IMG/VR virus record: IMGVR_UViG_3300009545_000018
Span: 372,001 to 436,000 of that record
Strand: one strand, 5' to 3'
Length of the DNA: 64,000 bases
In this document: one piece after another, positions 19,345-30,460 of the stretch
Numbering within the stretch: the first letter of the stretch is position 1
How the letters are laid out: each line of letters starts with the position of its first letter
Notes under the pieces: generated by a model
Told to the model about the DNA's origin: nothing
Seen by the model: the letters and a program-made list of their open reading frames with translations, nothing else
The model's database searches: none
Translations under genes and position numbers: made by a program

Positions 19345-19359
19345 TTTATTATATTAAAT

Positions 19360-19524
19360 ATGAGCAAATCTATATTTATAACCGGATATCTCAAATGGGA
19401 TGGCAAAAAATATATTATTAGAAATAATACTGAAAATATAGATGGAGAAATTACTGTTACATTAGATGATGAAAAAGTTGTATATTTTGTAAATGGAAAA
19501 TGTAAAATTGTAAATAAAAATTAA
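19360..19524 (+). CDS. Small hypothetical protein (54 aa)
   Basis: MSKSIFITGYLKWDGKKYII... Confidence 0.45.
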   Translation: MSKSIFITGYLKWDGKKYIIRNNTENIDGEITVTLDDEKVVYFVNGKCKIVNKN

Positions 19525-19628
19525 AATATACGTCTTTTTACTATAAATCCTGATTATTTAAAATATATGTAAGCTGCCTGCTAAAATTATCATATAATAT
19601 TAGTACTTAATGTTATGGTGGGTAATTA

Positions 19629-21236
19629 ATGGCAGATTGTTCAGACGCAATTAACGCACTAGTAGAAGCTGTAGAAGCTATTGAATTTGAATTGGGAGTT
19701 ACCCCAAGTACAGTCTATGCAAATGTTAGAGCTAGATTAGATATTCTAGAGGCTCGTATAAATAATCCATTTGCTCCAGCTCCAGATGTGGAAAATCCAT
19801 TTTTTATTGGAAATACTGGTGTTACCATTAGAGTTGGAGATGGTTATCCTGGACCTGCTGATGCGCCTGGTTCTTTATACTTAAGAACTGATGGATATGG
19901 TGGGCTTGGTGGTCTTTTCACCAGAGGAGCTGATAATTTATGGTGGGAAATAGGAGCTGGAGGTGGAGGTGGTGGAGGTGGGGGCGCGCCTTCAGGTCCT
20001 GCTGGAGGTGATTTAACTGGCACTTACCCTAATCCTACTATTCAGCTGAATACTATAACATTTGCTAAAATGCAAACTATAGCTACTGATAGCTTATTAG
20101 GCAGAGATACTACAGGTACTGGCAACATTGAGAATATTTTATTAAATACCACATTATCAATGGATGGATCTGGTAATTTACAGAGATCTGCATTAACTGG
20201 CGATGTAACTGCTTCTGCAGGATCAAATACTACTACAATTGTTAGTGATGCAATTACCACTTCGAAAATTTTAAATTCAAATGTAACATTTGCTAAAATG
20301 CAAACTATAGCTACTGATAGCTTATTAGGTAGAGATACTGCAGGTACTGGTAACGTTGAGAATATATTGTTGAATACTACTTTAAGTATGGATGGGTCCG
20401 GCAATCTACAACGTTCTGCTATTTCTGGAGATATTACTATTGCAGCAGGATCTAATACTGCAGACATTTCTTCTAATGTTATTGTAAATGCTGATATTAA
20501 TTCTTCTGCCGCCATTGATTTTAGCAAATTAGCCAATATAGCTACTGATAGTTTATTGGGTAGAGATACTGCAGGTACTGGAGTTTTAGAGACCATTGGT
20601 ATTAATAGTACTTTAATTATGAATGGTTCACAAGTTTTGGGTAGAGCAGCTATTAGTGGTGATGTAACTATTGCTACAGGATCTAATTCTGCCACAGTAA
20701 CAGATTTAACTATTACCTCAGAACAACAAGGTTCCATATTATATAACAATGGAAGTAATTGGGTACAATTATCACCAGCAACTGATGGTTATGTATTAAC
20801 TACACACTCAACTGGAAATAATCCTACTTGGGCTACTCCATATGCAACAATAACAACTTTACCAACTGGCTCTCAAAATGTAGAAGTAGATTTTTTGCCC
20901 TCTACAATTGCTAGCGGAACTGTTAATACAGGAGGTAACGTTACATATGATGTAGCTTTGACTAGTGGTAAACGTTATATTATATCTTCTGATGTTTATG
21001 TAGATAACGGCTCTGGCGGATGTGCATATCAAAAGGGTTTAAGAATTACGGCACATAATACAAGTGGAACAGCTACCATTGACATAAATGCAACATTGGG
21101 AGACAATGGAGGTTCTGGATTTACCTTTACAGCAGCTATTTCTACTACAAATGTTAGATTTACTCTGGCTAACACATCTGGTTCAAATAGAAATTATAAT
21201 ATAATTATTTCTAGAGTAATATTGGATAGACCATGA
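19629..21236 (+). CDS. Virion fibre-like protein with three ~76-aa repeats
   Basis: AIEFELG N-terminal segment shared with 27307; poly-Gly; [11 protein letters not shown]; 3x [12 protein letters not shown] modules. Confidence 0.75.
   Translation: MADCSDAINALVEAVEAIEFELGVTPSTVYANVRARLDILEARINNPFAPAPDVENPFFIGNTGVTIRVGDGYPGPADAPGSLYLRTDGYGGLGGLFTRGADNLWWEIGAGGGGGGGGGAPSGPAGGDLTGTYPNPTIQLNTITFAKMQTIATDSLLGRDTTGTGNIENILLNTTLSMDGSGNLQRSALTGDVTASAGSNTTTIVSDAITTSKILNSNVTFAKMQTIATDSLLGRDTAGTGNVENILLNTTLSMDGSGNLQRSAISGDITIAAGSNTADISSNVIVNADINSSAAIDFSKLANIATDSLLGRDTAGTGVLETIGINSTLIMNGSQVLGRAAISGDVTIATGSNSATVTDLTITSEQQGSILYNNGSNWVQLSPATDGYVLTTHSTGNNPTWATPYATITTLPTGSQNVEVDFLPSTIASGTVNTGGNVTYDVALTSGKRYIISSDVYVDNGSGGCAYQKGLRITAHNTSGTATIDINATLGDNGGSGFTFTAAISTTNVRFTLANTSGSNRNYNIIISRVILDRP
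20282..20350 (+). repeat. 69-bp perfect inverted repeat, left arm (partner 25436-25504)
   Basis: TGTAACATTTGCTAAAATGCAAAC...GCAGGTACTGG; a near-identical direct copy lies 228 bp upstream. Confidence 0.9.
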
Positions 21237-22003
21237 TAACTGGACCTATGGGGATACGTGCAGTTGGTAATATTACATTTAATCCATTTTTAATTGGAGG
21301 CTTAGTAGGTTGGTTTGATATGCAAGACACCACTAAGTTTACTCAAAGTGGAGGCTTTGTTCAAAGTATTACTAACAAGGCAACATCAGTCACTTGGAAT
21401 ACAGCCAATACTGTTTTACCAACCTATAATGCTACTGGTATTAATTCTTTTCCAGCAATGTCTTTTAATGGATCTAGTCAAGGAATAAAATCAACAACCG
21501 ATACTACTTTATTAAATGCTATTGGTGGAGATTTTGGCTATACTTTATTAGCTGTTATCAATATGTCAAACATCTCCAATAGAATGTTTTTTGGAGTTGC
21601 TAATAGTGCATCAGCAAACGGATTTAAATGTTGGGGAGCTAATACTAATGGAAGTGTAAAGTGGTCTATTAATGGAAATACTACTGGTGGCACACAGGCA
21701 AATGTTTTCTCAACTGCCAATGCAGATTCCAATAATAATGTTTATGCTGCTTGGGCACCATCTACTACCACAGCTTCTCTAAGAATAAATAATGGCTCCG
21801 AAGATCCTAGTGGAACTGCCGAATCAGTTGGAACTTTAACTTGTAATAATTTATGCATTGGATGTAGACCACGTTCTACAAATGATCTTAAATGGCAAGG
21901 CTTTGTAGGAGAAATTATTATATATAATAATTCTTTATCTACAGCCGATATTACTGTATTAACTAGATATTTAGGTAATAAGTGGAATATTTCTGTTTCA
22001 TAA
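21233..22003 (+). CDS. LamG/concanavalin A-like domain protein (probably structural)
   Basis: LVGWFD, FNGSSQG, GEIIIYNNSLSTADI...YLGNKW. Confidence 0.7.
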   Translation: MITGPMGIRAVGNITFNPFLIGGLVGWFDMQDTTKFTQSGGFVQSITNKATSVTWNTANTVLPTYNATGINSFPAMSFNGSSQGIKSTTDTTLLNAIGGDFGYTLLAVINMSNISNRMFFGVANSASANGFKCWGANTNGSVKWSINGNTTGGTQANVFSTANADSNNNVYAAWAPSTTTASLRINNGSEDPSGTAESVGTLTCNNLCIGCRPRSTNDLKWQGFVGEIIIYNNSLSTADITVLTRYLGNKWNISVS

Positions 22004-23116
22004 ATATTTTTTACATAATAACATTTTACTAAAAATATCTTCTCTTTCTTCTTTATTAACATTATAGTTATTCAATATAAATTTAAACATATCATATGAT
22101 TCTTGAAATTTATTAGTACAAAATGCCGCTAAAGCTAATTCATATTTTATTAACCATAAATAACAATTTGTATATATAAATAAACCATCTTCTGGTAATT
22201 GTAAATTAATACCTAATTTAGCATAAAAATAACTTAATTGAAACAATTTTTTTCTTCTAAAAAAAATTGATAAAGCTAATAAAGATTCTGCTCTATGTGG
22301 CAAAAGATTATAAGCCATAGTATAGGCATTTATGATACTGTTAGTATCATTAGGAGACATTTCTTCTAATACGTTTCCTAATCTATAAGCTGCAAAAAAT
22401 TTTTCTTCAATCCATCCATTTTCCATTAAAGCTCTTTTTTGATATGCTTCTGCAGATTTAGTAAAATACTCTGCAGATTTTAATATATTTTTTTGTTCTT
22501 TATAAATATAAGCAGAATCATAACAACTCTGTGCATAATAAAAAACATTTCTAGGATTAGATGGATTTTTTTCTATTTCTTTTTGTAAAATATTAGAATC
22601 CTTTACATATTTTAGTGGATCTTGAGATCTAGCACCATCTCCACCAAAAATAATATAGCAACCCTGTAATAATTTGGCTGTTATATTATTAACATCAATA
22701 TATTCATGCAAAACTCCTATATATTGAGACTGTATTGTGCTAGATATTAAAGCAATTCTTGGATATATTGCACCACTATGATGAATGTTTAAATTATATA
22801 CTGGATAATCTAAATTATTAAAACATAAATTATCATCAATTTGTAAGTAATCATCGGCATCAATAAATAGTAGGTAATCTGCTTTGGGTTTAGCTAAATC
22901 TAAAGAAATATTTCTATTGGTAGAAAAATCTACCCACTCATTTTTATGAAATTCTCCCGGTACATCTTTTAAAACTTCTTTAATAATTTGCTCAGTGTTA
23001 TCTGTGGATCCTGTATCACAAATAATCCAATAATCAATGTAATTTTTAACTGACTCTAAGCACCGAGCAATACAATGGGCTTCATTTTTTACAATCATAG
23101 ATAAACATATTGTCAT
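21998..23116 (-). CDS. GT2 glycosyltransferase with TPR-like C-terminus
   Basis: ICLSMIVKNEA, DTGSTD, FIDAD, LHEY; helical YYAQ/YRLG repeats. Confidence 0.88.
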   Translation of the reverse strand: MTICLSMIVKNEAHCIARCLESVKNYIDYWIICDTGSTDNTEQIIKEVLKDVPGEFHKNEWVDFSTNRNISLDLAKPKADYLLFIDADDYLQIDDNLCFNNLDYPVYNLNIHHSGAIYPRIALISSTIQSQYIGVLHEYIDVNNITAKLLQGCYIIFGGDGARSQDPLKYVKDSNILQKEIEKNPSNPRNVFYYAQSCYDSAYIYKEQKNILKSAEYFTKSAEAYQKRALMENGWIEEKFFAAYRLGNVLEEMSPNDTNSIINAYTMAYNLLPHRAESLLALSIFFRRKKLFQLSYFYAKLGINLQLPEDGLFIYTNCYLWLIKYELALAAFCTNKFQESYDMFKFILNNYNVNKEEREDIFSKMLLCKKYL

Positions 23117-23169
23117 AATAGTCTTTATAACCTATAATCGTTTTTATTAAATTATAATATTAACTAAAA

Positions 23170-23559
23170 TTAAAAAGTGCTAGTACGAATGTCGAGCCAA
23201 CCATTCCAAGCAATAGTGGTGGCAGCCACTCCATTAGCTCTAATTCTAATAATATTAGAAGAAGTATCTAAAGTAATAGTTGACGATGTTAAAGCGGCTG
23301 ATCCTTCTGACGCCACAATTGAAGTTTGAGATCCTAGCAAAGAAACAGTTCCTGAACTAATTAAAAAAGTAGCAGAGGCTTTAATACTAACTCCATTACT
23401 TGATTGTTTTCCAATAAGGGTACCTTCCACTACAACTATACAATTATCAACAACTGGAGTGTGCGAACCTGGTGTCCATGTATGAATGGTTGTCGCCGTA
23501 GTAGCATCAGTAGTATTAACAGTTGCAGAATTAACGGTAAAGTGATTAATTAAAGTCAT
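23170..23559 (-). CDS. Small Thr/Ser-rich beta protein, probably a virion component
   Basis: Composition and position downstream of a fibre gene. Confidence 0.55.
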   Translation of the reverse strand: MTLINHFTVNSATVNTTDATTATTIHTWTPGSHTPVVDNCIVVVEGTLIGKQSSNGVSIKASATFLISSGTVSLLGSQTSIVASEGSAALTSSTITLDTSSNIIRIRANGVAATTIAWNGWLDIRTSTF

Positions 23560-23562
23560 GAT

Positions 23563-26500
23563 TTAACCTATTGTAGTAATGACATCTGAAGTATTTCTTG
23601 CATAAAGCTGTCCGCCACTAGCATAGACAATAACACCACTAACAGGAGATGCTGATGGTGCTGTCGTTGCATTTCCGATATAAACAACTCCATCTCCAGA
23701 GTTTGTTGGCATTTGAGTGGAAGTTACTGCAGTGGTGCGAGCTAAGCCTATAACCATTCCGCTACTTGGATTAACTATTTGAATGCCAATATTAGATCCT
23801 CTTTGTATTTTAACATCACCATCAGCACTGGTTCCAACTCCAGATTTAATAATAATATTGCCACCAGTTCTTGTTCCGCTGGCACCACTAGATGCACCAG
23901 CAGCAAGGGTAAGAATGCCACCAGTACCACCAGCTAATGTGGTAGCCTGTGCTGTAATTGACATTGCAGCACCATCAGCCGCTGGTTGGTTAGCTTGATT
24001 TATAACTGCAGATGTTTGTGAGGCGTCCCATTGAAATGTGCTTGTTAGTATTGTAATTTGAGATCCAATTCTAAATACATCAGATCCATTTGATAAACAT
24101 CTAATTGAATTAGCTCCTGAAGGACCTGAAATAACAGTGTTAATAGTGCTATTACCTACAATAACAGCATCGCCATTATTAAGTTCTATCATTTTGGCAT
24201 CAGCCCCTACTGTAGTTCTACCATAAATGCCTTGTGCATTTGATAATCTAATTGCACCAGTAGTTGCTGGAGAAGATCCAAAAGTAATATAATCTGCTGT
24301 GCCAGTAGTCCATTGCGCCACAATAGTGTTACCTTTTTGAATAGTAACATAACCATCAGCACTAGCACCAGTACCAGAACGTATGGTGATATTACCACCA
24401 GTACGAGTTCCTGATCCTCCTGTAGCGTCACCTCCACGAAAAGTTGCTGCACCACCAACAACTGTTGTTGTTCCGCTACCATCTTGAGCCGCAAATAATG
24501 TGGACTGACAAGTGACTGTATTAGAAGCATCGGTTTCTTGCTGATATCTTGGGCTAGCAACACTTGATTTGTGTTGTATTTTTGGAGCATAAGATGTTAC
24601 ATCTGTACCAACAGTAAATTTTAAAGTACCACTTGCAAGAATTGAAATTGTAGATAATCCATGTATAGATGTTGAAAAAGAATCATCACCTATATTTAAG
24701 GTATCTGTAGTGGTATTTCCCCAATCAATAATTAAAGAATTATTACTATTAGTACTATTTCTTCCATAAATAGTAGTTCCATGAGCTAAACGAATAGTTC
24801 CAGTATTAGATGGATTAGTGCCAACTTTAAGACCTATTGAGTTTGTAGTAACAATAGTTTGTGAGCCAAAATCTGGATTTATTTTTGTACCAGCAATAGC
24901 AGCAGCGGCATCAACGTTAATATCTTTAATAAAATCAGTAGTTAGTGATGTGCCAGTTCTTAAGAAAACATATCCATCAGTACCCGCAACAATGTCAACA
25001 ACATTTGCAGTTGCATTAGTTGGATTACCAACAACTGATAATGCTGCAGATTGTCTAAATTTAGATCCGCTAACAACATTAGATGCAATTGTTGTTGCAT
25101 TACTTCCAGCAGGAGCGGTTACATCACCAGTTAATGCAGATCTCTGTAACCCTCCAGCTCCAGTAAATTCTATTCCACCACCAATAGTTATTTCTTCAAT
25201 TGGACCAGTTCCAGCAGTATCTCTACCTAATATTCTATCTGTAGTAATATCAGCAAGCTTACTAATAGCAATAGCAGCCGAAGCATTAATGTCAGAATTT
25301 ATAATTACACCCGCGGCAATAGCTGTTGTATTAGAGCCTGCAGAAGCAGTAATGTCTCCAGTTAAAGCTGCCCTCTGTAAAGAGCCCGAACCAGTCATAC
25401 TTAAAGTTGCATTTAATGTAATATTTTCTATATTGCCAGTACCTGCAGTATCTCTACCTAATAAGCTATCAGTAGCTATAGTTTGCATTTTAGCAAATGT
25501 TACAACATTATTAGCTATAGTGGGATTAGGATAAGTACCAGTTAAATCTCCTCCGGCTGCTCCACCAGGTATAGCTACATCCCAAGTAGGATTATTTCCA
25601 GTAGAATGTGTAGTTAACACATAACCATCAGTATTTGCGGCTAATCTAACCCAATTACTTCCATTAAAATATAGTATATCACCCTGTTGTTGTCCAGAAA
25701 TAGTTAAATCTGTTACTGTGGGGTTTGGATAAGTTCCTGAAAGATTACCACCAGCTGGACCAATAGGTACAGCCCCACCATTGACTAATCCCCAAGTAGG
25801 ATTATTTCCAGTAGAATGTGTAATTAAAGCATAACCATCAGTACCAGGAGGTAATTGTACCCAATTAGTGCCATTAAAATATAGTACAGATCCTTGAGTT
25901 TCTCCAGTAATAGTTAAATCTGTTACAATAGATGTAGTTGATCCTGCTGTTATAGTTACATCACCACTAATAGCTGATCTTTGTAGTCCACCAGAACCTG
26001 TAAATTCTAATCCTCCAGATACGGAAATTGTCTCTAAAGTTCCAGTACCCGCAGTATCTCTACCCAATAAACTATCAGTAGTTATAGTGGCTAATTTAGT
26101 AAAACTAATATTAGCATTACTATCAATGTATCCATCTACAATTTTAGAAAAGAAATTGGAATAACCATCACTTACATATGCTGTATTAACTAATCCTGTT
26201 GGTATGCTTCCAGAACCACCCATTGGTATCCATGATGAAGTACCCACTCCATCTTTACTTAAAACATATCCATTTGGAACACTGCTTAAATTGCCAATCA
26301 TGTTGGCGCCATACACATTTAAAGTAGATATTAAATTAGTTTGTGTAGTATTAAAATAAGCAGCTTGACCACCAATATGAATATTAACAACCACACCAGC
26401 AATATTTAATACATCGTTTTCAATAATACTTAAATCATTTAAATAAAAATTAAAATTACCACCAGCCACGTTTTCAAATGGAGCATATCCAAGACTTTTT

Positions 26501-27234
26501 TCTATTCTAGCATATCCATCCATAGTAATATTGCCAGAAGGAGAACTAATTAATGGTGCTGTAGCAGAGTTTAATGTTCTAAATATAGCATTGTTTAACT
26601 TAATATCTGTTGAAACAAATGGCAAACTAGCTATTATATTTGGAGTAGATGTTGCAGCTCCCAATACTCTTAGATTTCTAAATTCATAAGAGTTTCTTAA
26701 AACTGCACCTTCTGGTAATTGCATAGAAGGTAATATAGATGTATCTCCAGCATAACCTTGAATAATAGTATTTTTACTTAAATTCCATGTGCCAGCTGGA
26801 ATACTAGCTGGTGAAGATAATGAATCATCAATAACAATAGTGGCTAATCCATTTACAGCATTTCTTGCAGCCATTAATAATGACCAAGAGGTATAAATAT
26901 TTCCAGTAGCAACACCTGCTGGTTTATAAATAAAAACTTGTCCACCTTGAGGACCAGTTGGACCAGTAGGTCCGGTTGGACCAGTAGGTCCAGCAGGTCC
27001 TGTTAGTCCTGCAGGTCCTGTAGGTCCTGTTGGACCTGTTGGTCCTGTAATTCCATTTGCTCCATTAGTACCATTAGTTCCAGGTGTGCCTGGAGCCCCA
27101 GGAGGTCCAACAGGACCTGTTGGTCCCGTTGGTCCAGTGGGTCCAACACCACCTCCACCACCACCACCACATCCTCCTGGATCTACTGTTGGTAAAGAAT
27201 CTGGATCATCATATGCATTAGGATATTTAGTCAT
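23563..27234 (-). CDS. Large fibre-like protein with collagen-like and repeated modules
   Basis: (GPT)n collagen tract; [24 protein letters not shown] and [10 protein letters not shown] modules shared with 19629. Confidence 0.8.
25436..25504 (-). repeat. 69-bp perfect inverted repeat, right arm
   Basis: Reverse complement identical to 20282-20350, same codon phase ([23 protein letters not shown]). Confidence 0.9.
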
Positions 27235-27306
27235 ATTTAGTACCTACACGTTATACTTTAGTATACTAAATTTTTAGTATATAATAATATTAGAGGTATA
27301 AAACTT

Positions 27307-30300
27307 ATGACTAAATATCCCGCTCAATTAGACAACTCTTCAAGTCTACCTATTATTTTAGATGATTCTCTTATTAATGGAAGCATTTATAATACATTGA
27401 GAGGGGCTGTTATTGCAATAGAACAAGAATTAGGGGTTAAACCAAGTGGAGTTTATTCTACTTTAAGAAATAGAATTGAAGTTTTAGAAGCAAGTATAGG
27501 GCAATCTTCAGGAGTTCAATTAAATAAGGATTTAGGTGGTACTCTTGAACTTCCGACAGTAATAGGATTACAAGGAAGACCCATAAGCGAAACAGATCCT
27601 TCAATAAATGATATTTTAACTTGGAATGGAGTTGCTTGGATACCTCAAGCTGGAACTGGAGGTCCTACAGGACCAACAGGACCTGCTGGCGCAGATGGAG
27701 CAATAGGACCTACAGGTCCCACAGGTCCTGCTGGAGCAAATGGAATTACAGGACCTACTGGACCTACAGGACCTATAGGTCCTACAGGACCCGCTGGTGT
27801 AAATGGAGATCCAGGACCAATTGGTGCTACAGGACCCGCCGGACCAATTGGTCCCATTGGTCCCGTTGGTCCAGGAGGACCAGGTGTTGATGAAAGATCT
27901 CCAAGAACTAGTGTTAGAGTTAAAGCAACAACTAATTTAAATATAGCTGGTTTGGTTAGTAGAACGCAAGATGGTGTTACTTGTACTGAAAATCAAACTA
28001 TTTTATTAGGATCACAAACAAATCAAAGTGAAAATGGTATTTATATATTTGGAACAGCTTCTGCTGGCAATGCTCCTCTTATAAGAATTGATAGTCCATT
28101 TTCTAGTTGTTATGCTACTGGTTCTGGTTTTAGAATTATGGTAAGAGAAGGTACCGTTAATGCAAATACTCAATGGACAATAAATAGTAGTAAACTCGTA
28201 TCTAGTGCAACTCCAGTTGGATTATCAGCTACTGACGTAGATATTGAAGATTTTTATATTACAACTGATGGAAATGATTATTCGCCTGCCTGGCATAGAA
28301 TGCAAGGAGCAATGCGTTGTAATAATGCTATAGGTACATGTTTTATAAGAAGAAAATCTTCTTATAGATTTGCGACACCATTATTATTAACACAAGCTAT
28401 TGCCATAAAGAGTAATGGTGGTACATTAAAGAACGGACCTCAATTAAATTTTGCTAAATCTGGTATTTGGGTAATTGGTGGAAATAGAGAAAGTGATGGC
28501 GGATTAACTAATGCTGGCGGCACTGTAATGGATGAATTGCTTTTGCTTGGTCCAGGCTATAATACAGCAAATTTTTGGTGTGGTATTAATGCCACTTGTC
28601 AAATTTTTGCAAACAATGTATCAGTGCAAAGTTTTCCTGGACGAGGGGTTAATTTATATGGATCAACAAGTCATGATTATGACAGTATAAATACAACTAC
28701 ATCAGCTAATTTTACTGTTCCAAGTGCTGGAACTACAGTATCCATTTCTTTTACAAATGGTGCTTCCATAAATACTGGAACAACTTTAAAAATTGCTGGT
28801 GCTGGATATTATTATGTTGAAGCCGTTTTAGGTGGCGGAACATTTACGTGTCAAAATATTGGATTTGCTAGCGATACAGCATATGCAGTTGCTAATGCTG
28901 TAGCTGGAACCGTAATATCATCAGGGGCAGTTACACGTGGCGTATTCGGAAATGTTGATATCTCAAGTATAACTGGTGGAGCTATGTTACAAAATGGATT
29001 ATCTGGATTATACATATCTGGTGATAATTCTAATGCCAGCTATTTTCTTGGTGTAAATATTACAGATAATGGGAAAAGACAGATAAAAGATGATAATCAT
29101 GGTGCAGTTGATGCATCATTTTTAGGTAACACCTGGATTATGATGCAAGCAGCCTCAAATACTGATCATGTTCCTTTAGGAATTCAAACTGCAGCTAATT
29201 TTAATTTGCCAGCAGAATCATATGGTACTACTGATTATGATAACACAAACTCACTTGGGGCGGCGGGATTACCAACTGTTACCTTAACTTTAACTAGTGT
29301 TGCTGGAATATCAGTTGGTGATAGAATAGCTATTGCTGCTGCAGGAACCATAGCAGTAGTTGCTACCCCGAGCACAAACGTACATCTTGCATCTAATCAA
29401 ATTAAAGCTAATTTTTTGAGACATACATTGGCAGATGGTTATTTAATCACTAGCGGTAAAGATTTATTATGGCCAGCATATGCTTACTTATGTGAAGGAT
29501 CTGGAGCTGACTCTGCTTATGTGGGATGTTATTCAGAATCTTCCGATGTTAGTAAAATTGATTTACCTTCTCAAGTTTTAAGCGGAAGAGTCGGAAATAT
29601 AGGAACTGCTGGTCGAATAACTTCTACTACTGCAGCTACTGAACCTAATACTATGTTTTGGAGAACTAGGGGCAAACAACAACCATATTTTGGAACTGGT
29701 TTATTAGGATCTAATCAAGTCTTTTCATTTGGTTGTGATGCTGGAAGTGATGGAGGTAATGGATATACATTTGAGTGGGATGAAACAAATAAGTTTTATA
29801 ACTTTTTATATGCTGGCAAAATAGCATCTTATTTTACAGGCAATAGTTTTGCTCCTAGTGGAAAAGCTTATGGAGCTGGTTTTACTAGTTTTCCTAGAGG
29901 TCACCTATTCGGATCACATCGCTTTCATTCTTCAACTGTTGCTAACGTACCAACAGTAAGTTCAGCATCTGATAATTGGGAAGTTGGAGATGTTATTATT
30001 AATAGAGATGCTACAGGACCATGGATGTATCGTTGTACATCTAAAGTTTCTAATAATTTAACATTTGCTTCTGATAGAATATCTTTAAAAAATCAAACTT
30101 GTAATTTAGGATCTTCTGTTGCAGCATCTACAGCTGGAACCACAGTTACTAAAACTTTAACTGGAGCGGAAGTTGGAGATAATGTTATTTGGAATTTAAG
30201 AGGAGCCCCTATAGCTGGAGTAACTTTTTATGTTCGTATTTCAACTACAGATACTGTAGAAATTATTGCATGGAATGGAACAAGCTCACCTCAGGACTTA

Positions 30301-30339
30301 TCAGCCACCATTTTTGATTTTACTGTTATAAAAACATAA
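27307..30339 (+). CDS. Fibre/tailspike-like protein with collagen tract
   Basis: MTKYP..LD N-terminus, AIEQELGV, Gly-X-Y repeats, Gly/Asn/Ser-rich beta-helix-like body. Confidence 0.75.
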
Positions 30340-30460
30340 TACATTAAATTTGTAATAATATCATTGCAAGTCATGTTAAATCTATTAAAACTAATTTTAT
30401 TGATTTAAGTTTGATTTTAATTGATATAATATTCGATGCTAACTAAATATTAGGAAAAGC

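What the first reader, a model, noticed from the sequence alone, without database searches (positions are those of the whole stretch)
20282..25504. Perfect 69-bp inverted repeat shared in frame by two convergent fibre genes: possible C-terminus swapping inversion
Seen: 20282-20350 (+ gene 19629) is the exact reverse complement of 25436-25504 (- gene 23563-27234), in the same codon phase, while the flanks diverge at synonymous sites. Recombination here would invert about 5.1 kb and exchange the two C-terminal halves, moving the LamG, GT2-TPR and 129-aa genes with them. A second near-identical copy 228 bp upstream and shared [10 protein letters not shown]-coding patches offer more crossover points. 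Known: Mu Gin/P1 Cin switch fibre tips with this geometry, but no invertase is visible here. Inference: homologous inversion or recent gene conversion between fibre genes.
Basis: partly seen in the sequence, partly recalled or inferred. Interest (0 to 1): 0.6.

Follow-up and report, generated by a model that had tools for sequence, protein, structure and literature searches.

The report
Gene-conversion patch between two phage fibre genes
Two facing tail-fibre-like genes of a 448-kb soil phage share a perfect, in-frame 69-base stretch that marks recent copying between their repeat modules; it could in principle let the phage flip 5 kb and swap fibre ends, but no flipped form and no flipping enzyme were found.

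Summary
Window 20282-20350 is the exact reverse complement of 25436-25504, in the same codon phase. It is the longest exact repeat in the whole 447,763-bp genome.

The two genes (g1, 535 aa; g2, 1223 aa) are convergent paralogous fibre-like proteins built from DUF5907 repeat units. The patch is the first 23 codons of one unit. Around it, only 48% of codons for identical residues match; inside it 21 of 21 match (P about 2e-7). A third copy in g1 is 97% identical. This is a recent, probably repeated, gene-conversion tract.

The genome has a RecA/UvsX-like gene but no serine or tyrosine recombinase and no reverse transcriptase.

Crossover in the patch would give two open chimeras of 864 and 894 aa. 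No such form was found: all three long public contigs have the parental order, and no chimera appears among public gene calls. The only available run is kept as k=31 contigs, which cannot resolve a 69-bp repeat.

Related fibre loci carry similar exact in-frame patches in direct orientation, so the inverted geometry looks incidental.

Verdict: real, but an ordinary case of concerted evolution in a fast-changing fibre island. Inversion is possible but unproven.

The parts
20282..20350 (+). Arm 1 of the perfect 69-bp inverted repeat. It is the head (codons 219-241, [23 protein letters not shown]) of DUF5907 unit 2 of g1.
   Evidence: Exact reverse complement of 25436-25504. Longest exact repeat in the genome.
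25436..25504 (-). Arm 2 of the perfect 69-bp inverted repeat. It is the head (codons 578-600) of DUF5907 unit 2 of g2.
   Evidence: Same codon phase as arm 1.
20056..20122 (+). Third, 97%-identical copy of the patch: the head of DUF5907 unit 1 of g1. Of it, 46 nt are exact to both other copies.
   Evidence: Same-codon counts are 18/20 and 19/20, against about 50% in the unit bodies.
19629..21236 (+). g1, a 535-aa fibre-like protein. Order of parts: N-terminal anchor helix shared with g3, poly-Gly linker, three DUF5907 units, one ...[10 protein letters not shown] module, then a unique tip (aa 403-535) with a weak CBM_4_9 match.
21233..22003 (+). 256-aa LamG-like (concanavalin-type) protein. Its start overlaps the g1 stop (ATGA).
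   Evidence: phrog_10356, virion structural protein, E 1e-13. Atlas feature score 0.99 and TM 0.82 to viral Laminin_G_3 clusters.
21998..23116 (-). 372-aa family-2 glycosyltransferase. Its stop overlaps the stop of the LamG-like gene.
   Evidence: PF00535, E 6e-13. Homologues lie in the fibre islands of L130 and L137.
23170..23559 (-). 129-aa protein that starts 4 nt after g2's stop codon. Likely a tip accessory or adhesin linked to the g2-type C-terminus.
   Evidence: In L037, a 48% homologue directly follows a 55% homologue of g2 aa 1108-1223. It belongs to a viral family of unknown function.
23563..27234 (-). g2, a 1223-aa fibre-like protein. Order of parts: MTKYP start, collagen-like Gly-X-Y run, 275-aa domain, DUF5907 unit 1, two GNNPTW modules, DUF5907 units 2 and 3, then a 490-aa C-terminal part.
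20542..20572 (+). A further exact 31-nt inverted match, head of g1 unit 3 against head of g2 unit 1 at 26051-26081. This is a second possible crossover register.
   Evidence: Same-codon count is 18/19 in the heads of these two units.
27307..30339 (+). g3, a 1010-aa third fibre-like gene, divergent from g2. It shares the MTKYP start with g2 and the anchor helix with g1. It is context, not part of the invertible span.

Best explanation
The window belongs to a 447,763-bp tailed phage from a rhizosphere metagenome. Between two conserved genes (an AAA_28 gene and a GidA-like gene) lies a fast-changing island of host-recognition genes. It holds three fibre-like genes (g1, g2, g3), a LamG-like protein, a family-2 glycosyltransferase and a 129-aa accessory gene.

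g1 and g2 are paralogues built from the same modules: 76-aa DUF5907 units and ...GNNPTW modules. The perfect 69 bp is a short tract of non-reciprocal homologous recombination, that is, gene conversion. It has homogenised the most conserved part (the first 23 codons) of three DUF5907 units: two in g1 and one in g2.

The repeat is inverted only because the two genes happen to converge. The phage encodes its own RecA/UvsX-type strand-exchange protein, so such exchange needs no dedicated enzyme.

A reciprocal crossover in the same tract would invert about 5.2 kb and re-pair the N- and C-terminal halves. It would give open frames of 864 and 894 aa. I expect this only as a rare by-product, not a programmed switch.

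What is shown: the identity and its statistics, the module architecture, the absence of invertase and reverse-transcriptase genes, the presence of a RecA-like gene, and the parental order in all long assemblies.

What is inferred: the conversion mechanism, and the low frequency of inversion.
For: - Exactness and phase of the repeat.
- 21/21 identical codons in the patch against 26/54 in the flanks, P about 2e-7.
- The heads of units g1u1, g1u2 and g2u2 are homogenised (18/20, 19/20 and 21/22 same codons). Their bodies stay near 50% (Fisher p 0.003 to 0.0004).
- It is the longest exact repeat in the genome.
- A RecA family match lies in a 407-aa ORF (E 4e-22).
- No PF00239, PF00589 or PF00078 anywhere in the genome.
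- Related fibre loci show the same kind of exact in-frame patch between paralogous fibre genes, but direct. L037 has 51 nt between two tandem fibre genes, L042 has 49 nt between two N-terminal anchors, and L047 has 83 and 68 nt inside one 3568-aa protein.
- The exact g1 protein and the parental gene order are found in all three long contigs that carry the locus.
- No near-identical chimera among 878 homologues.
- Both the JGI and the ENA assemblers ran straight through both arms. That argues against a large inverted subpopulation.
Against: - No reads could be examined. The only run is kept as k=31 contigs, which break at the repeats, so a minority inverted isomer is not excluded.
- The three long contigs may come from related samples or one study, so they may not be independent.
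- Conversion and crossover share intermediates, so a conversion tract is itself a sign that the two arms pair. That makes some inversion likely.
- The in-frame position, and the accessory genes that travel with each C-terminus, fit a useful swap as well as they fit an accident.
Confidence: 0.7

Rival explanations
1. Homology-driven flip-flop. The phage's own recombination machinery inverts the 5.2-kb segment often enough that every lysate holds both isomers. This puts each receptor-binding end on either a short stalk (g1) or a long collagen-bearing stalk (g2). The perfect patch is kept by selection as the crossover site.
For: - The arms are in frame and both chimeras are open.
- Each C-terminal half carries its own downstream accessory gene. 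The LamG-like gene is coupled to g1. The 129-aa gene follows g2, and that pairing is conserved in L037.
- A RecA-like gene is present.
- There are three homogenised copies plus a 31-nt register.
- There is a precedent: lytic cyanophages hold both isomers of an IR-flanked 30-kb segment with no known invertase (bioRxiv 10.64898/2026.02.14.705889).
Against: - 69 bp is far shorter than the 400-700-nt repeats of that precedent.
- All three long assemblies are parental and run unbroken through the arms.
- No chimera appears in public gene calls.
- Relatives lack the convergent arrangement altogether. Their equivalent patches are direct repeats, where crossover would delete rather than switch.
- Both tips are expressed in either orientation, so the gain from switching is unclear.
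Confidence: 0.2
2. A Gin/Cin/Hin-type or shufflon-type site-specific inversion system, with the 69-bp arms as crossover sites.
For: Only the geometry: inverted in-frame sites inside fibre genes, with accessory genes inside the segment.
Against: - No serine or tyrosine recombinase in the 447,763-bp genome, with positive controls.
- The arms are ordinary copies of a repeated coding module found six times in the two genes, not a special site.
- Both genes have their own N-termini.
Confidence: 0.03
3. The identity reflects a constraint on the nucleotide sequence itself (an RNA structure or a protein-binding site), or is an assembly artefact.
For: None specific. It is the default worry for a perfect repeat in a metagenome assembly.
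Against: - No Rfam family, and no promoter or terminator signal above chance.
- The other three units encode a similar motif with different codons (6/13 to 8/17 same codons for g2u3).
- Relatives are only about 70-75% identical there.
- A second assembler's contig encodes exactly the same 535-aa g1 protein, LamG-like protein and 129-aa protein.
- The Logan contigs of the run lie on the stretch with no differences.
Confidence: 0.04

Closest known systems
Recombination between conserved motifs in T-even distal tail-fibre genes (gp37/gp38). Source: Tetart et al. 1998, 'Genome plasticity in the distal tail fiber locus of the T-even bacteriophage: recombination between conserved motifs swaps adhesin specificity'. 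I found this title only in reference lists; its content is from my own knowledge.
   Same: Short conserved coding motifs inside modular fibre genes serve as homology patches. General recombination exchanges receptor-binding parts there, and no dedicated enzyme is needed.
   Different: There the exchange is mainly between co-infecting phages, at motifs that lie in the same orientation. Here the patch links two paralogues in one genome, in inverted orientation, and what is documented is conversion, not a swap.
Invertible fibre segments: Mu G (Gin), P1 C (Cin), p15B Min.
   Same: Inverted sites lie in frame inside a fibre gene. The segment carries the C-terminal parts together with their accessory genes.
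   Different: Those systems have an adjacent serine invertase and short specific crossover sites. They have one constant N-terminus with two alternative C-termini, only one of which is expressed. Here no invertase exists in the genome, the site is a generic repeat-unit head, and both genes have their own starts.
IR-flanked genomic isomerism in Anabaena cyanophages A-1(L), N-1 and Elbi (bioRxiv 10.64898/2026.02.14.705889).
   Same: A lytic tailed phage with a segment bounded by inverted repeats and no known invertase. Homologous recombination during replication was proposed as the cause.
   Different: There the repeats are 400-700 nt, the segment is about 30 kb, and both isomers were shown by PCR and reads. 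Here the repeat is 69 nt, the segment is 5.2 kb, and no second isomer has been seen.
Concerted evolution and gene conversion between repeated surface-protein cassettes, for example Neisseria pilE/pilS (from my own knowledge).
   Same: RecA-dependent, non-reciprocal transfer seeded in short conserved blocks that are flanked by divergent sequence.
   Different: There is no silent-cassette archive here. Both partners are full expressed genes, and the tract homogenises a conserved part rather than importing variation.

Membership tests
Gin/Cin/Hin-type invertible fibre segment | A serine invertase gene (Resolvase family) next to or near the segment. | tested here: not met
   PF00239 six-frame search of the whole 447,763-bp genome gave 0 matches at E<=0.1. 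The controls rang in 13 of 14 genomes.
Gin/Cin/Hin-type invertible fibre segment | One constant N-terminal gene part joined alternately to two C-terminal parts, with only one expressed. | tested here: not met
   Both g1 and g2 have their own start codons and N-terminal parts. Inversion would give two complete chimeras.
Gin/Cin/Hin-type invertible fibre segment | Both orientations are found in a population. | tested here: inconclusive
   Three long contigs are all parental. Contigs built at k=31 cannot resolve a 69-bp repeat.
Shufflon (Rci tyrosine recombinase) | A tyrosine recombinase gene and multiple short sfx-like repeats. | tested here: not met
   PF00589 gave 0 matches in the genome. The controls rang in 14 of 14 genomes.
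Diversity-generating retroelement | A reverse transcriptase, plus a template/variable repeat pair that differs at adenines. | tested here: not met
   PF00078 gave 0 matches. The repeat copies are identical rather than adenine-mutated.
Gene-conversion tract between paralogous repeat units (concerted evolution) | A run of identity, synonymous sites included, that significantly exceeds the divergence of the flanking homologous sequence. | tested here: met
   21/21 against 26/54 same codons, P about 2e-7. Heads against bodies in three units gave Fisher p 0.003 to 0.0004.
Gene-conversion tract between paralogous repeat units (concerted evolution) | A homologous-recombination function is available. 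| tested here: met
   A RecA family match, E 4e-22, lies in a 407-aa open frame at genome position 253 kb.
Homology-driven IR isomerism (cyanophage type) | Long inverted repeats (hundreds of nt) and co-existing isomers. | tested here: inconclusive
   The exact arms are only 69 nt, or 300 nt at 78%. The isomers cannot be tested with the data on hand.
Phage tail fibre / receptor-binding protein | Fibre-type modules, and homologues annotated as tail fibres. | tested here: met
   Collagen repeats and PHROG tail-fibre families are present, though those hits are driven by the collagen part. DUF5907 homologues number 878, and one carries a Collar domain and is named tail fiber protein. No solved structure is related outside the collagen part. 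Presence in the virion was not tested.

The most novel reading that the evidence does not exclude
A recombinase-free fibre re-pairing switch. The perfect in-frame patch would be maintained by repeated conversion and used by the phage's own RecA/UvsX machinery to flip 5.2 kb. Each burst would then contain virions carrying either tip, with its own accessory gene, on either the short stalk or the long collagen-bearing stalk. That would be a bet-hedging device in a lytic huge phage with no dedicated invertase.
Probability: 0.12. Interest if true: 0.65.

Novelty: new member of a known kind. Interest (0 to 1): 0.3.

Why it matters
Fibre genes decide which bacteria a phage can infect, and little is known about how huge soil phages vary them. 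This locus gives a clean, statistically solid example of recent exchange between two fibre paralogues within a single genome. It lies in an island that differs in every relative examined. If the inversion were real and frequent, it would show host-range-related switching without an invertase. As it stands, it documents ordinary concerted evolution, and it marks a site where a simple PCR or read count would settle the question.

Tried and rejected
- **Reads.** The only public run holding the sequence is kept as Logan contigs and is probably the source sample. The contigs break at every repeat head and show no joints. This says nothing for or against inversion.
- **Junction patterns.** Exact 32-nt left-junction patterns of both arms were scanned in IMG/VR and gave no hits, because the own record is hidden.
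- **Orientation in relatives.** The AAA_28 to GidA island is rebuilt in every relative, and none has g1/g2 orthologues in a convergent pair.
- **Inverted block in some relatives.** The GidA..o229 block is inverted in L114/L136 and L130, but no inverted repeats flank it. It does not bear on this mechanism.
- **Site-specific recombinases and a DGR.** Rejected after whole-genome family searches.
- **RNA element, promoter or terminator in the patch.** Nothing found.
- **TPR in the glycosyltransferase.** Not confirmed.
- **Giant virus of eukaryotes.** Considered because of the size, the 30% G+C and the collagen repeats. The NCLDV capsid search was blank, but its control was also blank. The phage reading rests on DnaB, PhoH and PhuZ-like genes, RNR, RecA, and weak sheath and terminase matches.
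- **Not done.** No structure prediction was run. The tips have no homologues from which to build an alignment, and the result would not bear on the inversion question.
Full report
**1. Observation**

Window 20282-20350 is the exact reverse complement of 25436-25504, 69 of 69 bases. The first arm lies in a + strand ORF at 19629-21236 (g1, 535 aa). The second lies in a - strand ORF at 23563-27234 (g2, 1223 aa). Both arms start at the third base of a codon.

The homology continues for 300 nt, but at only 78%. A third copy at 20056-20122 is 97% identical.

A scan of the whole genome for exact repeats of 30 nt or more found 15 pairs. This pair is the longest, direct or inverted.

**2. More than chance**

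The right null here is the divergence of the two paralogous genes, not random sequence.

- In the ungapped codon alignment around the patch, 26 of 54 degenerate codons for identical residues use the same codon. Inside the patch it is 21 of 21.
- That gives P about 2e-7 from the local background and about 6e-7 from the genes' codon usage.
- Allowing for 15 unit pairs and some tens of possible windows still leaves about 1e-4.

The two genes hold six DUF5907-type units, three each. In units g1u1, g1u2 and g2u2 the first 23 codons share 18/20, 19/20 and 21/22 codons. The rest of the same units share about half (Fisher p 0.003 to 0.0004). g2u3 encodes a similar motif with different codons. The identity is therefore not forced by the protein or by codon bias.

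g1u3 and g2u1 form a second pair with a 31-nt exact inverted match.

**3. What the genome is**

The window is bases 372001-436000 of a 447,763-bp IMG/VR virus record from a rhizosphere metagenome. G+C is 30%.

Several genes mark it as a huge tailed phage. In the window:
- DnaB-like and other helicases.
- Both ribonucleotide reductase subunits.
- PhoH.
- A PhuZ-like tubulin.

Elsewhere in the genome:
- A RecA/UvsX-like gene.
- Weak tail-sheath and terminase matches.

**4. What the genes are**

- **g2 and g3** (27307-30339) carry collagen-like Gly-X-Y runs and match PHROG tail-fibre families through them.
- **g1 and g2** carry DUF5907 repeats.
- **Homologues.** A word-based search of 5.8 billion proteins gave 878 homologues at E<=1e-10, nearly all with DUF5907. 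One has a phage Collar domain and is named tail fiber protein.
- **The g1 tip.** Homology of relatives to g1 stops again and again at residues 401-403, just after [10 protein letters not shown]. Residues 403-535 are therefore a unique tip, with a weak CBM_4_9 match (E 8e-4, below the cut-off).
- **The LamG-like gene.** The 256-aa gene that overlaps the g1 stop is LamG-like.
- **The glycosyltransferase.** The 372-aa gene is a family-2 glycosyltransferase.
- **The 129-aa gene.** It follows g2 and belongs to a viral family of unknown function. In the relative L037, a 48% homologue again directly follows a 55% homologue of the g2 C-terminal end. That tip and this small gene therefore travel together.

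**5. Could it invert, and does it?**

An in-silico inversion leaves two open frames. One is g1(1-241)+g2(601-1223), 864 aa. The other is g2(1-600)+g1(242-535), 894 aa. The 46-nt register gives 788 and 970 aa. The geometry claim is therefore right.

I found no sign that the inversion happens.

- The exact 535-aa g1, the 129-aa gene and the LamG-like gene lie in the parental order in all three long contigs that carry them: JGI 447,763 bp, ENA 399,192 bp, and one more that the tool reports only as a similar place.
- No chimera of the predicted kind is among the homologues. The best non-self hit is 51% identical.
- Two assemblers ran through both arms without a break, which argues against a large minority isomer.
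- The single public run is kept as k=31 contigs, which end at each repeat head. The inner 4,923-nt contig spans 20543-25465. New junctions would create no new 31-mers, so this test is blind.

**6. Enzymes**

The genome has no Resolvase-family recombinase, no tyrosine recombinase and no reverse transcriptase. The Resolvase and tyrosine-recombinase searches had strong positive controls (13 and 14 of 14 genomes); the reverse-transcriptase control rang in 3 of 14. A Mu/P1-type invertase, a shufflon and a DGR are therefore out. The phage's own RecA-like protein is enough for conversion and, rarely, for crossover.

**7. Relatives**

Searches with the flanking M24 peptidase and GidA-like genes found a family of 100-470-kb phage contigs. 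They share the backbone PhoH - M24 - AAA_28 - [island] - GidA-like - four further genes.

- The island ranges from about 2 kb to 11 kb, and its content differs in every relative.
- Only the roughly 110-aa N-terminal anchors of g1 and g3 are conserved, and the glycosyltransferase recurs in two relatives.
- No relative has the convergent g1/g2 pair.

Other fibre loci show the same kind of exact in-frame patch between paralogous fibre genes, but in direct orientation:
- 51 nt between two tandem fibre genes in L037.
- 49 nt between two N-terminal anchors in L042.
- 83 and 68 nt inside a 3568-aa protein in L047.

Conversion between fibre paralogues thus looks common in such phages. The inverted case here follows from gene orientation.

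**8. Comparison with what is known**

In mechanism this is closest to recombination at conserved motifs in T-even fibre genes, and to concerted evolution of repeated surface-protein genes (own knowledge; the title was seen). In shape it resembles the Mu G and P1 C segments, but it fails their defining features. A recent preprint shows that lytic cyanophages can hold both isomers of an IR-flanked segment with no known invertase. There the repeats are 400-700 nt and both isomers were demonstrated.

**9. Verdict**

This is a real feature, correctly described. It is best read as a recent, probably repeated, gene-conversion tract between modular fibre paralogues in a fast-changing island of a huge soil phage. 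The inversion is possible but unproven, and it is unlikely to be a dedicated switch. Counting reads across the arms would settle it.

Noticed in passing
window 19345-30460; loci L114-L146: The stretch between the AAA_28 gene and the GidA-like gene is a hypervariable fibre island. It is about 2 kb in some relatives (L129, L134, L138, L146) and 11 kb here. Its content differs in every relative, while the flanking backbone is 60-75% identical at the protein level.
   Followed up: partly
L114, L115, L136, L145 and L130: In these relatives the block GidA-like..o229 is inverted relative to PhoH-M24-AAA_28, with fibre genes on both sides. No inverted repeats of 40 nt or more flank the block.
   Followed up: partly
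window about 27135-27153 (collagen-coding N-terminus of g2): Two other assemblies of the same phage break here. L126 (48,634 bp, 100% identical over 14.5 kb) starts at 27135. The 399,192-bp ENA contig ends with g2 cut to 1196 aa. Together they add up to the 447,763-bp record. The cause is probably the 9-nt-period collagen repeat, but this was not examined.
   Followed up: no
window 26950-27135 and 27645-27790: g2 and g3 are divergent, 72 nt apart, and both start with MTKYP. Their collagen-coding parts form inverted repeats of 85-130 nt at 74-75% identity. g1 has only the second motif of the canonical N-terminus (the ELGV helix), and g2 has only the first.
   Followed up: no
window 23170-23559; L037 593-961: The 129-aa gene and the g2-type C-terminal end are adjacent in a distant relative too. 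The Atlas model of the 129-aa protein aligns (TM 0.70) with the C-terminal part of proteins that carry the Mtd_N domain. That hints at a small receptor-binding or lectin-like partner rather than a chaperone.
   Followed up: partly
window 21998-22003: The LamG-like gene (+) and the glycosyltransferase gene (-) converge, and their ends overlap by 6 nt (21998-22003), leaving no intergenic space. No terminator-like site lies there.
   Followed up: no
genome 296,816-302,369 (outside the window): A cluster of exact direct repeats of 30-66 nt suggests another family of paralogous genes under homogenisation.
   Followed up: no
genome 66,125-66,175 and 218,686-218,736 (outside the window): A 51-nt exact inverted repeat whose arms lie 152 kb apart. 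Not identified.
   Followed up: no
genome 319,122-321,548 (outside the window): A second group of fibre-like genes. One is a 402-aa ORF with a DUF5907 match, and two have g3-like N-termini. They lie about 10 kb upstream of the weak tail-sheath match.
   Followed up: no
L117 5678-8200; L118 5621-8131; L124 6945-9440: In three relatives the PhoH homologue is split by about 1.0-1.2 kb between residues 295 and 296. In L124 the two hits overlap. This suggests an inserted element such as an intron, an intein or a homing-endonuclease gene.
   Followed up: no
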